Part shown: one piece after another, positions 5,366 to 62,242 of the stretch
How positions within the stretch are numbered: the stretch's first letter is position 1
Layout: each line of letters starts with the position of its first letter
Origin: Mizuhopecten yessoensis
Taxonomy: Eukaryota
Assembly: GCF_002113885.1 (NCBI RefSeq)
Contig: NW_018407731.1
Location: forward strand, 260,863 to 324,862
DNA length: 64,000 nt
Direction of reading: 5' to 3'
Made by a program: the position numbers and the translations under genes
The notes under the pieces: generated by a model
What the model was told of the DNA's origin: nothing
What the model saw: only the letters and a program-made list of their open reading frames with translations
Database searches by the model: none

Positions 5366-5781
5366 TGTAACAAGAGAATGAGAAATGCAACGGCCAGACT
5401 CTAGTTCGAACACAGGAGCCTCCAAACTCTACTGTAGACCTATCAATTGAGCACAGGTACTATTAAAGGTGTATTGACAGTCGTGGCTAGTACTTGTGAA
5501 TTGAGCTACCTGGTCGCCGACGATTGACCCAGTCCAGTTCAGCTACTGTACATTTCTCCCTCCTTTTTCAAAGTATTTGCCGACGGAGACGCAATTATTT
5601 ACAACCCAGGTTCAGGTATCCCCTTGCCAAGCATATACCAAATGCTTTAAACAAGGGTTGGCAAGCTGGCCAATTTTGTAGCAGGAGAAAGAGAAATGCA
5701 ACAGCTAGACCCGGGTTCGAACCTGGGACCCTCTGAATTCTTAGACGGACGCTCTACCAATTGAGCTATTCGCCGATGATT
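5366..5781 (-). mobile_element. Near-complete tRNA-LTR TRIM, family B (5' LTR 5781-5677, truncated at its start; internal 5676-5553; 3' LTR 5552-5366)
   Basis: Two direct tRNA-like LTR copies. TGG lies 4 nt after the 5' LTR (5672-5670) and PPT GAAAAAGGAGGGAGAAA (5569-5553) abuts the 3' LTR TGTA. CATG flanks both sides (5362-5365, 5782-5785). Confidence 0.85.
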
Positions 5782-32826: not shown

Positions 32827-32960
32827 TGTAGCGAAACTGGACTGGGTCGATCATTGGCGACCTGACGTAGCTCAATTGGTTAGAGTGCCCGATTAGAGTT
32901 TGGAGGGTCCTGGATTCGAACCCTGGTCTGGCCATGCATTTTCCCCTCTCCTTAGTTACA
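32827..32960 (+). mobile_element. Solo LTR of family B tRNA-TRIM
   Basis: TGTAGCGAAACTGG...tRNA-like...AGTTACA; flanks CTTC/CTTT (3 of 4 match); homologous to 61282-61410 and 5366-5552. Confidence 0.82.
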
Positions 32961-50791: not shown

Positions 50792-50995
50792 TGTGGCAGG
50801 GTTCAATTGTACATAGGATTAAGGTCACCTTCTAGCTTAGAGCTAGAGGGAATTTCCCTTCAGCTCAGTTGTAGAATTTCCCTTTAGCTCAGTGGTAGAA
50901 TTTCCCTTTAGCTCAGTGGTAGAGTGTCCGACTAGGAACCAGGAGATCGAGGGTTCGATCCCCGTCAGAAGCACACTATTCTCTTTCCTGTTACA
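50792..50995 (+). mobile_element. Solo LTR of family A tRNA-TRIM, with a triplicated 24-bp A-box segment
   Basis: TGTGGCAGGG...CTGTTACA with perfect TSD TGTA (50788-50791 and 50996-50999). Length 204 = 156 + 2x24. Confidence 0.92.
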
Positions 50996-61281: not shown

Positions 61282-61410
61282 TGTAGCGGAACTGGACTGG
61301 ATCGATCTTCAGCGACCAGATAGCTCAACTGGTAGAGCACCTGTCTAAGAGTTCGGAAGGTCCGGGGTTCGAACCCCGGTCTGGCCGTGCACTTTTCCTC
61401 TCCTGGTTCA
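61282..61410 (+). mobile_element. Solo LTR of family B tRNA-TRIM
   Basis: TGTAGCGGAACTGG...GACCAGATAGCTCAACTGGTAGAGC...GGTTCGAACCCCGGTCTGGCC...CCTGGTTCA; flanks TTAG/TTGG (3 of 4 match). Confidence 0.82.
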
Positions 61411-61425
61411 TTGGTTCATTGCAGG

Positions 61426-61828
61426 TTTGGCAGGGTTCAATTGTACATAGGATTAAGGTCGCCGTCTAGCTTCGAGCTAGAGGGAATTTCCCTTTAGCTC
61501 AGTGGTAAAGCGTCCGACTAGGAACCTGGAGATTGAGGGTTTGATCCCCGTTGGAAGCACACTATTCTCTTTCCTGTTACAAATGGTGTCTGTGGCCTGC
61601 TCTGTGGTGACAGGGAGTTAGAACCTGGGTTGTGGTGATTGAGGGCGAACACATTTAAAAAGGGGGGAGTAGTGTGGCAGAGTTCAATTGTACATAGGAT
61701 TAAGGTCGCCGTCTAGCTTCGAGCTAGAGGGAATTTCCCCTTAGCTCAGTGGTAGAGCGTCCAACTAGGAACCTGGAGATCGAGAGTTCGATCCCCGGTG
61801 GAAACACACTATTCCCTTTCCTGTTACA
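61426..61828 (+). mobile_element. Complete TRIM (miniature non-autonomous LTR retrotransposon) with tRNA-like sequence in each LTR, family A
   Basis: 156-bp LTRs at 61426-61581 and 61673-61828 (T[G/T]TGGCAG...CTGTTACA; 11 differences). PBS-like TGGTGTC at 61584, PPT AAAAAGGGGGGAG at 61657-61669, TSD CAGG at 61422-61425 and 61829-61832. A-box TAGCTCAGTGG and B-box GTTCGATCC lie inside the LTR. Confidence 0.93.
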
Positions 61829-62242
61829 CAGGTAACACCGTCGTAAGCGTCTAGTCGCTTCTTGAGGTGCTTCTTAATACTGTCCACTTCACTTCAGGTT
61901 GCATTTGTAGGCATTTGAAAAAGACATTTTTCTCAAAAACTAGTGAAAATGATTGACATGTGCAGTGGTTGGTAACAAAAGTTGCATCCTAATTCAATAT
62001 AAAATAAGAGTATTCATTTATAAAAAAAGACTGACAGGCCTGTATAGATCACAAATCTCAAAACAAAAAAAAACAAAAAAAATATTTAGTATGAATACAC
62101 ACATTGTGGTTAAGTTTTTACAGACCTTTCAATGAGCTGTACATGGAAGTATAGATAATAAAAGGTTGCACGAGTTAAAAAATACTGAATTTAGATTGGA
62201 CTAATTTTATTGATGCCGGAAGTCTGTATGTATTACCCCAGC

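What the first reader, a model, noticed from the sequence alone, without database searches (positions are those of the whole stretch)
5366..5781. Second tRNA-LTR TRIM family sharing internal cis-motifs with family A
Seen in sequence (minus strand): LTR, AAATTGG, a stem CTTGCCAA...TTGGCAAG, GGGA, GAACCTGGGTTGT (5613-5601), GGCAAATACTTTGAAAAAGGAGGGAG, LTR, with CATG on both sides. Family A has a different LTR outside the tRNA boxes, yet its interior also reads GGGA..GAACCTGGGTTGT (61621-61633)..GGCGAACACATTTAAAAAGGGGGGAG. An identical 13-mer and a conserved pre-PPT block in two families with diverged LTRs suggest a functional signal for packaging, dimerisation or plus-strand priming recognised by a common helper (inference). 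The first ~20 bp of the 5' LTR are missing, so the CATG match could be chance.
Basis: partly seen in the sequence, partly recalled or inferred. Interest (0 to 1): 0.82.

Follow-up and report, generated by a model that had tools for sequence, protein, structure and literature searches.

The report
Scallop mini-retrotransposon with second tRNA-His site
This is a decayed copy of a known kind of tiny, non-coding retrotransposon (Helenus, with tRNA-like repeats at both ends), and the 13-letter motif it shares with a second family is the exact complement of an inner arm of the host's histidine tRNA, so it is most likely a second docking site for the tRNA that primes copying of the element.

Summary
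Window 5366-5781 (minus strand) is a degraded LTR-interior-LTR element. The 13-mer sits at 5613-5601 and again at 61621-61633.

Both elements are Helenus TRIMs, described by Kojima in 2024 (PMC10886601). Earlier notes of this scan already flagged them in this genome.
- Family A is the published Helenus-2_MiYe.
- Family B is not among the four families listed for this scallop. Its LTR matches Helenus-1_ArIr and Helenus-2_PeMa.
- B is abundant (2828 candidate hits). In the 29 loci fetched it appears as LTR-interior-LTR in most, and several copies have 4-bp target duplications.

What I add:
- **The 13-mer.** It is the exact reverse complement of nucleotides 43-55 of the host tRNA-His (variable loop, 5' T-stem, TTC). 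The primer-binding site of A and of two B subfamilies matches the 3' end of the same tRNA. So the 13-mer is most likely a second primer-tRNA contact, as in Ty1, Ty3 and the HIV-1 PAS. It is less likely a packaging or plus-strand signal.
- **A candidate helper.** A Gypsy family with the same LTR end (CTGTTACA) and a tRNA-His primer site carries the same 12-mer in U5.
- **The pre-PPT block.** It is a hairpin with a G-rich loop followed by the polypurine tract. Its stem differs between published families by paired changes. Its role is unknown.

Function is inferred, not shown. This is a new member of a known kind, of moderate interest.

The parts
5677..5781 (-). 5' LTR remnant of the family B Helenus copy. 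It is tRNA-like with box A and box B, ends in ..CTGCTACA, and lacks its first ~22-25 nt.
   Evidence: alignment to intact B LTRs from L016 and L018.
5658..5676 (-). Position where the primer-binding site should be. This copy is of subtype B1x and reads AAATTGGCCAGCTTGCCAA, which matches no tRNA 3' end that I tested. Subfamilies B2 and B3 carry a tRNA-His PBS at this place.
5621..5657 (-). Hairpin 1 of family B: CCCTTG..AAGCAT-loop-ATGCTT..CAAGGG. It lies between the PBS position and the 13-mer.
5601..5613 (-). 13-mer GAACCTGGGTTGT, the exact reverse complement of host tRNA-His nt 43-55. Proposed second tRNA-His binding box.
5571..5592 (-). Decayed pre-PPT hairpin. Intact copies read GTCTTCG-GGGG-CGAAGAC.
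5556..5569 (-). Polypurine tract GAAAAAGGAGGGAG.
5366..5552 (-). 3' LTR of the B copy, with a ~50-nt insertion inside the tRNA-like module. It ends in ..TGTTACA.
61426..61828 (+). Family A element, a copy of Helenus-2_MiYe. LTRs at 61426-61581 and 61673-61828, interior at 61582-61672, 4-bp target duplication CAGG at 61422-61425 and 61829-61832.
61584..61597 (+). Family A PBS, TGGTGTCTGTGGCC. It is an imperfect match to the tRNA-His 3' end (complement TGGTGCCGTGACC).
61621..61633 (+). The same 13-mer in family A.
61635..61669 (+). Family A pre-PPT hairpin (GTGATTG-AGGG-CGAACAC in this copy; the published consensus reads GTGTTCG..CGAACAC), then a spacer and the PPT AAAAAGGGGGGAG.
61282..61405 (+). 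Solo LTR of family B lying just upstream of the A element. ARAGORN calls it tRNA-Leu(aag) and Rfam scores it as tRNA at 39.7 bits.

Best explanation
Window 5366-5781 is an old, damaged copy of a Helenus-type TRIM. This is a ~380-bp non-coding LTR retrotransposon whose ~130-bp LTRs (TG..CA) carry a tRNA-like module with Pol III boxes A and B. It would be mobilised in trans by an autonomous Ty3/Gypsy element.

The interior has a fixed layout: primer-binding site, variable hairpin 1, the 13-mer, hairpin 2, polypurine tract.

The 13-mer shared with family A (Helenus-2_MiYe) pairs perfectly with nucleotides 43-55 of the host tRNA-His (variable loop, 5' strand of the T-stem, and TTC of the T-loop). 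The PBS pairs with the 3' end of the same tRNA. The 7 tRNA nucleotides between the two contacts are left unpaired and include position 58. In eukaryotic tRNAs generally, position 58 carries the m1A at which reverse transcriptase stops (textbook knowledge, not tested here).

I therefore read the 13-mer as the second half of a bipartite primer-binding site. It would help to open, place or activate tRNA-His for minus-strand DNA synthesis. Hairpin 1 would bring the two halves together.

The pre-PPT block is a stable hairpin with a purine-rich four-base loop, followed by the PPT, which is the plus-strand primer. The hairpin's role (binding of the helper's nucleocapsid, or marking the PPT) is a guess.

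Shown: the element's structure, its family, the complementarity, and the conservation. Inferred: the function of the 13-mer, the role of the hairpins, and the identity of the helper.
For: 1. **Family.** B gives 2828 candidate hits. Most of the 29 fetched loci show LTR-interior-LTR, and several have 4-bp target duplications. Family A equals the published Helenus-2_MiYe. The B LTR matches Helenus-1_ArIr and Helenus-2_PeMa.
2. **Host tRNA-His.** Six identical genes were read (L031:1451-1522 and others). The reverse complement reads TGGTGCCGTGACC, then AGGATTC, then GAACCTGGGTTGT. The 13-mer is therefore a 13/13 match. In B2 and in copy L017 it is 14/14 (CGAACC..).
3. **Chance.** The longest complementary word between the interior (PBS excluded) and tRNA-His is 13-14 nt. 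It was reached in 0-2 of 3000 shuffles. Against tRNA-Lys the longest word is 5-6 nt.
4. **Same tRNA at the PBS.** B3 copies have a perfect 13-14-nt tRNA-His PBS plus the 13-mer (L041; L047, L051 and L062 with 1-2 changes in the 13-mer). B2 and A have near-perfect tRNA-His PBSs. Kojima's Fig. S2 also assigns tRNA-His.
5. **Conservation across families.** Hairpin 1 is not alignable between the His-type families, yet the 13-mer is kept. It is 13/13 in Helenus-2_MiYe, -4_ArIr, -4_PeMa and -5_PeMa. It is 12/13 in -4_MiYe, -3_PeMa and -2_SaGl. It is 11/13 in the oyster families -2_CGi, -2B_CGi and -1_SaGl.
6. **Independent placement.** Other LTR elements with a tRNA-His PBS but no tRNA-like LTR carry boxes in U5, upstream of the PBS. 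GAACCTGGGTTG occurs in L057 and in a Gypsy family. ACTATACGATCAC, the complement of tRNA-His nt 4-16, occurs in six exact copies against 0 for the control. A box upstream of the PBS cannot be a read-through relic.
7. **Match between PBS type and box type.** Many published Lys-type Helenus read TGGCGCCCAAC, then 5-6 nt, then ACCCACGG. The second part is the complement of the 5' T-stem of the scallop tRNA-Lys.
8. **Precedent.** Ty1 and Ty3 use bipartite PBSs that contact the T-arm (PMC5371799). The HIV-1 PAS pairs with the T-arm of tRNA-Lys3 (PMC1865047).
Against: - No experiment and no RNA data.
- The window copy itself and the numerous B1 subfamily have a non-His sequence at the PBS position (AAATTGGCGAGCTTGCC) yet keep the 13-mer. 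Either the box is only inherited there, or it has another role.
- Within family B there is no covariation beyond shuffles. Whole-interior folds are not more stable than shuffles (z from -1.4 to +0.5). RNAduplex energies against tRNA-His do not beat shuffled tRNAs.
- Some variants of the box (Pinctada, oyster) have 2 mismatches that are not wobble pairs.
- The first 9-10 nt of the box can also pair with the element's own tRNA-like T-arm in B.
- Helenus-4_MiYe has no hairpin 2, so that hairpin is not universally needed.
- The candidate helper could not be fetched, so its coding state and its pre-PPT region are unknown.
Confidence: 0.62

Rival explanations
1. The 13-mer is a non-functional relic. 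An ancestor acquired a long PBS by read-through copying of the tRNA-His primer past position 58. A hairpin was later inserted into it. The distal part survives by descent only.
For: The PBS and the 13-mer are collinear with the tRNA complement, with only 7 tRNA nt missing between them. Elements with 18-24-nt tRNA-His PBSs exist in this genome. B1 keeps the box without a tRNA-His PBS.
Against: The box is kept at 11-13 of 13 in family consensus sequences from scallops and oysters, while the adjacent hairpin 1 has been replaced beyond alignment. The same 12-mer, and a D-arm complement, occur upstream of the PBS in U5 of other elements, where read-through cannot place them. Nothing after the 13-mer resembles the tRNA complement (p 0.06-0.99).
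Confidence: 0.17
2. One reading: the 13-mer is a packaging, dimerisation or plus-strand priming signal that is read by proteins of a shared helper, independently of any tRNA.
For: It is conserved between families with different LTRs. It lies ~25-35 nt from the PPT. The candidate helper Gypsy carries the same 12-mer.
Against: A 13/13 match to the very tRNA that the PBS selects is not expected for a protein-binding site. The 13-mer is not a palindrome, so it is a poor kissing or dimer site. In the helper candidate it lies in U5 beside the PBS, far from any PPT.
Confidence: 0.1
3. The 13-mer pairs within the element's own RNA, with the T-arm of the tRNA-like module in the LTR. This would shape the transcript, for example by masking the Pol III-type module or aiding strand transfer.
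For: In B, CGAACCTGGG can form 10 pairs (one of them G-U) with CCCGGGTTCG of the LTR. In the window copy the LTR reads CCCAGGTTC, an exact 9-nt partner.
Against: In family A only about 6 pairs are possible with its LTR (GAGGGTTCGAT), yet A keeps all 13 nt. The distal part TGGGTTGT matches tRNA-His and neither LTR. Gypsy and L057 LTRs have no tRNA-like module but carry the box.
Confidence: 0.05
4. The shared motifs are a chance resemblance between two unrelated repeats.
For: With up to 2 mismatches the window has 4 matches, and 7 of 100 shuffles reach that number.
Against: There are two perfect copies in homologous positions. There are 583 exact copies in the genome against 10 for the control. 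The motif is present in the published consensus sequences.
Confidence: 0.01

Closest known systems
Helenus (TRIMp3), tRNA-LTR TRIMs of Kojima 2024 (PMC10886601); in particular Helenus-2_MiYe, Helenus-1_ArIr and Helenus-2_PeMa
   Same: Two short LTRs with a tRNA-like box A/box B module and TG..CA ends. A ~90-125-nt non-coding interior with PBS and PPT. 4-bp target duplications. Occurrence in Pectinidae. Family A is Helenus-2_MiYe itself. The B LTR is the counterpart of the Helenus-1_ArIr and Helenus-2_PeMa LTR.
   Different: B is not one of the four families listed for this species. It joins that LTR type to a His-type interior, whereas the Argopecten and Pecten counterparts have a Lys-type interior. 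In what I read of the paper (Results, Discussion, Fig. S2), only the first ~20 nt of each PBS are aligned to tRNA 3' ends, and I saw no mention of the second box or the pre-PPT hairpin.
Bipartite or extended primer-binding sites of yeast Ty3 and Ty1 (PMC5371799)
   Same: Besides the 3'-end site, a second template segment pairs with the T-arm of the primer tRNA (in Ty3 also the D-arm). The elements belong to, or depend on, the Ty3/Gypsy group.
   Different: The primer here is tRNA-His, not initiator tRNA-Met. The second box is 13-14 nt long and perfect. It lies 23-46 nt downstream of the PBS across a hairpin, not ~4.8 kb away in U3 as in Ty3. Function is untested here.
Primer activation signal (PAS) of HIV-1 (PMC1865047)
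   Same: A short motif complementary to the 5' side of the T-arm of the primer tRNA. In the candidate helper Gypsy and in L057 it sits in U5 upstream of the PBS, as the PAS does.
   Different: 12-14 nt instead of 8. In the TRIMs it lies downstream of the PBS. This is a retrotransposon of a mollusc, not a retrovirus.
Cassandra (5S-rRNA-LTR TRIM of plants)
   Same: A TRIM whose LTRs carry a Pol III-type small-RNA module.
   Different: The module is 5S rather than tRNA, and the hosts are plants. No shared sequence.

Membership tests
Helenus (TRIM with tRNA-like LTRs) | Two direct terminal repeats around a short non-coding interior, total length about 311-1263 bp | tested here: met
   The window copy is 416 bp. 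Intact relatives are ~380 bp with ~130-bp LTRs and 122-130-nt interiors.
Helenus (TRIM with tRNA-like LTRs) | LTR contains a tRNA-derived sequence with box A (TRGCY..YGG) and box B (GGTTC) | tested here: met
   TAGCTCAATTGGTAGAGC and GGTTCGAACCC are present in the LTRs. The solo B LTR at 61313-61388 is called tRNA by ARAGORN and by Rfam.
Helenus (TRIM with tRNA-like LTRs) | PBS complementary to a tRNA 3' end, directly after the 5' LTR | tested here: inconclusive
   Met in subfamilies B3 (13-14 nt perfect to tRNA-His) and B2 (one extra T). Not met in the window copy or in B1, which read AAATTGGCSAGCTTGCC and match no tRNA 3' end that I tested.
Helenus (TRIM with tRNA-like LTRs) | Polypurine tract directly before the 3' LTR | tested here: met
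   GAAAAAGGAGGGAG at 5569-5556. AAAAAGGAGGGAGG is the majority state in B copies.
Helenus (TRIM with tRNA-like LTRs) | 4-bp target-site duplication (animal Helenus) | tested here: met
   For the family: CATG (L004), CTAG (L010), AAAA (L015), CTTA (L016), ATAG (L020). For A in the window: CAGG. For the window B copy this cannot be verified, because the 5' LTR is truncated.
Bipartite or extended PBS (Ty1/Ty3 type, PAS-like) | A second template segment complementary to the T-arm of the same tRNA that the PBS binds | tested here: met
   13/13 (A, B) or 14/14 (B2 and copy L017) to tRNA-His nt 43-55/56. 0-2 of 3000 shuffles reach this length. The PBS is of the tRNA-His type in A, B2 and B3.
Bipartite or extended PBS (Ty1/Ty3 type, PAS-like) | The second segment is conserved where neighbouring sequence is not, and changes with the primer tRNA | tested here: met
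   Published consensus sequences keep 11-13 of 13 across ten His-type families whose hairpin 1 sequences are unrelated. Lys-type families instead carry ACCCACGG, which matches tRNA-Lys. This comparison was done by eye on published sequences.
Bipartite or extended PBS (Ty1/Ty3 type, PAS-like) | The second segment is needed for efficient initiation of reverse transcription | not testable with these tools
   This needs primer-extension or retrotransposition assays.

The most novel reading that the evidence does not exclude
Bivalve Ty3/Gypsy elements and the Helenus TRIMs that depend on them use an unusually long (12-14 nt), perfect second contact with the primer tRNA. This contact behaves as a movable module. 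It sits in U5 of the helper, but has moved to the interior in the TRIMs, where U5 is occupied by the Pol III tRNA-like module. It is paired with a hairpin carrying a G-rich four-base loop before the PPT, which would serve as the packaging handle. If so, helper-TRIM pairs could be predicted from three features: PBS type, box type and LTR ends.
Probability: 0.3. Interest if true: 0.55.

Novelty: new member of a known kind. Interest (0 to 1): 0.4.

Why it matters
How TRIMs stay tied to their autonomous helpers is an open point that Kojima's paper states directly. This finding offers a concrete, testable link: the same primer tRNA, the same auxiliary tRNA-binding box, and the same LTR terminus in a TRIM and in a Gypsy family.

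It also extends the idea of a bipartite primer-binding site from yeast Ty elements and retroviruses to mollusc retroelements.

On the practical side, Helenus LTRs are scored as tRNA genes by standard tools. One in this window is called tRNA-Leu, so tRNA gene counts in bivalves are inflated by these elements.

The element class itself is already published, so the gain is incremental.

Tried and rejected
1. **Hairpin 2 as a diverged copy of the tRNA-His anticodon-arm complement.** Local alignment of the stretch after the 13-mer to the rest of the tRNA complement was no better than shuffles (p 0.06-0.99). Rejected.
2. **RNAduplex energies of whole interiors against tRNA-His or tRNA-Lys.** Not better than shuffled tRNAs. 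This measure does not discriminate, so I used the longest exact complementary word instead.
3. **Thermodynamic support for the whole interior.** z-scores range from -1.4 to +0.5, so there is no support. Hairpin 2 alone is stable: -10.2 kcal/mol, with 0 of 500 shuffles as stable.
4. **Covariation within family B.** None beyond shuffles. This is expected for neutrally decaying copies. RNAalifold also offered an alternative pairing, CCCGAA with TTCGGG.
5. **The L043/L052 element (L084, L085) as helper.** It is a ~3-kb element without long reading frames and without a clear PPT or hairpin. Set aside.
6. **L050/L083.** A Helenus-2 LTR and a perfect 18-nt tRNA-His PBS are joined to the middle of a Gypsy protease region. 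One replication cycle cannot produce a pair of unlike LTRs, so I do not count this as evidence of co-packaging.
7. **Reading frames beside the L054 and L067 elements.** No Pfam match.
8. **Fetching the candidate helper** (contig C3892, about 962.4-971.1 kb) and other copies. I did not try to get round this.

Full report
**What is in the window**

On the minus strand, 5781-5366 reads as follows:
- a partial LTR (5781-5677, ending ..CTGCTACA);
- AAATTGG and a short interior;
- the 13-mer GAACCTGGGTTGT (5613-5601);
- a decayed hairpin region (5592-5571);
- a polypurine tract (5569-5556);
- a second LTR (5552-5366, ending ..TGTTACA).

The same 13-mer is at 61621-61633, in the interior of a second element. 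These are the only two perfect copies in the window.

Aligned to intact relatives, the 5' LTR lacks its first ~22-25 nt and 4 more. The 3' LTR has a ~50-nt insertion in the tRNA-like part. The two LTRs are 77% alike over 65 nt, so this is an old, dead copy. Because the 5' LTR is truncated, the upstream CATG is not at an LTR edge, and the CATG pair is best read as chance.

The LTRs of the two families resemble each other only in the tRNA-like module and at the termini.

**What kind of element it is**

The genome has 988 Mb in 82,659 contigs. A search of it with the 416-bp stretch gave 2828 candidates. Of the 29 loci fetched, most show the order LTR, interior, LTR. Several have clean 4-bp target duplications, for example CATG, CTAG, AAAA, CTTA and ATAG.

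A literature search found Kojima 2024 (PMC10886601). It names TRIMs with tRNA-like LTRs "Helenus". It reports them in Pectinida, including Mizuhopecten yessoensis assembly ASM211388v2. It reports 4-bp duplications in animals, and it proposes Gypsy helpers from PBS similarity alone.

In its supplementary FASTA:
- Family A of this window equals Helenus-2_MiYe, in both LTR and interior, including the 13-mer and the pre-PPT block.
- Family B is not among Helenus-1 to -4_MiYe.
- The B LTR matches Helenus-1_ArIr and Helenus-2_PeMa, whose interiors are of the tRNA-Lys type.

So B is an unlisted member of a known kind, and LTR types and interior types have been reshuffled among scallops. Earlier notes of this scan reached the same identification for family A and for the tRNA-His primer.

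**Subfamilies of B**

The interiors fall into four groups:
- B3 has a perfect 13-14-nt tRNA-His PBS.
- B2 reads TGGTGCCTGTGACC (one extra T).
- B1 reads AAATTGGCGAGCTTGCC.
- B1x, which includes the window copy and L017, reads AAATTGGCCAGCTTGCC.

The majority state downstream is the same in all four: a nested hairpin (CCCTTG..CAAGCAT-loop-ATGCTTG..CAAGGG), then ..ACCC, then the 13-mer, then AAATAG.., then GTCTTCG-GGGG-CGAAGAC, then TTAG, then the PPT.

It is paired in 72% of cells, shows no compensatory change, and overlaps the 3' arm of the better conserved hairpin.

**The 13-mer explained**

I searched the genome for the 3' part of tRNA-His and found 14 exact matches in gene clusters. ARAGORN calls six of them tRNA-His(GTG), and all six are identical (L031:1451-1522).

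The reverse complement of this tRNA with CCA reads TGGTGCCGTGACC, then AGGATTC, then GAACCTGGGTTGT. So the PBS of the His-type elements pairs with the 3' end. The 13-mer pairs, 13 of 13, with nt 43-55 (variable loop, 5' strand of the T-stem, TTC of the T-loop). In B2 and in copy L017 the preceding C extends this to 14.

The longest complementary word between interiors (PBS removed) and tRNA-His is 13-14 nt. It was reached in 0-2 of 3000 shuffles. Against tRNA-Lys it is 5-6 nt. In the genome the 13-mer occurs 583 times, against 10 for the reversed control.

**Why I read it as functional**

1. Published family consensus sequences keep the box although the hairpin before it is unrelated between families. 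It is 13/13 in Helenus-2_MiYe, -4_ArIr, -4_PeMa and -5_PeMa. It is 12/13 in -4_MiYe, -3_PeMa and -2_SaGl. It is 11/13 in three oyster families.
2. The stems of hairpin 1 differ by paired changes: CTCCCTG/CAGGGAG, CTCCCCG/CGGGGAG, CTCCAAG/CTTGGAG, CCCCTGG/CCAGGGG, CCCTTG/CAAGGG. I read these by eye. They fit a spacer that brings the PBS and the box together.
3. Elements that have a tRNA-His PBS but ordinary LTRs carry tRNA-His complements in U5, upstream of the PBS.
   - L057 has GAACCTGGGTTG at -47, followed by a near-complement of the D-arm.
   - L054 and L067 have ACTATACGATCAC, the exact complement of nt 4-16. This combination has six exact copies genome-wide against none for the control.
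   - A relic of read-through copying cannot lie upstream of the PBS.
4. Many Lys-type Helenus read TGGCGCCCAAC, then 5-6 nt, then ACCCACGG. The second part is the complement of the 5' T-stem of the scallop tRNA-Lys(CTT). Two exact instances exist in this genome. So the box follows the primer.
5. The design has precedent. Ty1 and Ty3 have bipartite PBSs that contact the T-arm, and Ty3 also contacts the D-arm (PMC5371799). The HIV-1 PAS pairs with the T-arm of tRNA-Lys3 and enhances priming (PMC1865047).
6. The seven tRNA nucleotides left unpaired between the two contacts include position 58. In eukaryotic tRNAs generally this is the site of the m1A that stops reverse transcriptase (established knowledge, not tested here). 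The canonical 18-nt PBS seen in L043, L050 and L052 ends there.

**A candidate helper**

The pattern "12-mer, 20-50 nt, tRNA-His PBS" hit contig C3892. There the sequence reads GAACCTGGGTTG, then 33 nt ending in CTGTTACA, then TAAT, then TGGTGCCGTGA.

This LTR end occurs 12 times within 3 mismatches. Eleven of the 12 have the 12-mer intact. Two of them lie 7.9 kb apart on C3892, on either side of a protease/RT match.

Fragments of a degraded copy (L083) match RVT_1 and then Integrase_H2C2. That order fits Ty3/Gypsy.

The terminal CTGTTACA is also the end of the A and B LTRs. This makes the family the best candidate for the shared helper, at about one chance in three. I could not fetch it.

**The pre-PPT block**

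In intact copies this is a hairpin. GTCTTCG-GGGG-CGAAGAC at L017:1644-1661 folds at -10.2 kcal/mol, and 0 of 500 shuffles are as stable. It is followed by 3-4 nt and then the PPT.

Family A has GTGTTCG-AGGG-CGAACAC in its published consensus, a paired C-G to G-C change relative to B. Oyster families have GATCTTCG..CGAAGATC and GGTCTTTGG..CCAAAGACC. Lys-type families have AACTCG-AGGA-CGAGTT, AATTCG-AGGA-CGAATT and ATATCG-AGGA-CGATAT (read by eye).

So the feature is structural and widespread in bivalve Helenus. However, Helenus-4_MiYe lacks it. It is not derived from the tRNA.

Its purine-rich four-base loop resembles the G-rich tetraloops that retroviral nucleocapsid proteins bind in packaging signals. 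This resemblance comes from my own knowledge, not from a tool. A role in marking the PPT is equally possible.

**Weak points**

- Function is inferred only.
- B1, the subfamily that is commonest among the fetched copies (a sample biased toward it, since the query was a B1x copy), keeps the box without a tRNA-His PBS. Its PBS region matches no tRNA that I tested.
- Copies within a family show no covariation.
- Global folding and duplex energies give no support.
- The box can also pair 9-10 nt with B's own tRNA-like T-arm, although only about 6 nt in A.
- RNA data could not be obtained.

**Verdict**

The element is a new member of the published Helenus kind. The useful addition is that the shared 13-mer is a tRNA-His T-arm complement, most likely a second primer-binding box, and that a Gypsy family with the same box, primer and LTR end is a candidate helper.

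Noticed in passing
L050 / L083 (G000:C2051:781270-791336): A Helenus-2_MiYe LTR and a perfect 18-nt tRNA-His PBS are joined, after 15 nt, to the middle of the protease region of the candidate helper Gypsy. A Gypsy-type LTR end lies 9.9 kb downstream. The two ends are unlike LTRs, so this looks like a DNA-level rearrangement or a nested insertion with a deletion. The origin is unresolved.
   Followed up: partly
B1 copies, e.g. L002:1550-1673, L004:1609-1738; window 5676-5658: Subfamily B1 (the commonest among the fetched copies) has, where the PBS should be, AAATTGGCGAGCTTGCCAA. This is a small palindrome-like hairpin (TTGGC/GCCAA). Its start resembles the Lys-type PBS of Helenus-2_PeMa, but it matches no tRNA 3' end that I tested. 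How this subfamily was primed is unexplained.
   Followed up: partly
L054, L067; also G000:C5162:233846, C5525:1107331, C59341:351, C76692:323195: Another LTR element family with a tRNA-His PBS has in U5 a 13-nt exact complement of tRNA-His nt 4-16 (5' acceptor strand and D-arm). Its LTR end, CGTCCTATTACA, equals that of Helenus-4_MiYe.
   Followed up: partly
window 61282-61405, 32827-32952, 50792-50994: Three solo Helenus LTRs (B, B, and A with a ~40-bp insertion). The first is called tRNA-Leu(aag) by ARAGORN and passes Rfam's tRNA threshold. Such LTRs will inflate tRNA gene counts in this genome.
   Followed up: partly
LTR ends of B2 copies, e.g. L018:1423-1552: B2 LTRs end in ..GTGCATTTTTCCTCTCCTGTTACA. 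The T5 run would be a Pol III terminator inside every LTR. A replication-competent transcript starting in the 5' LTR would have to read through it. B1 LTRs mostly have T3-T4 at this place.
   Followed up: no
L084:4938-8002 (G000:C262), L085: A ~3-kb element with two LTRs, an 18-nt tRNA-His PBS, GAACCTGGGT in U5 and a short protease-like stretch, but no long reading frame. It is probably a non-autonomous derivative of another Gypsy lineage.
   Followed up: partly
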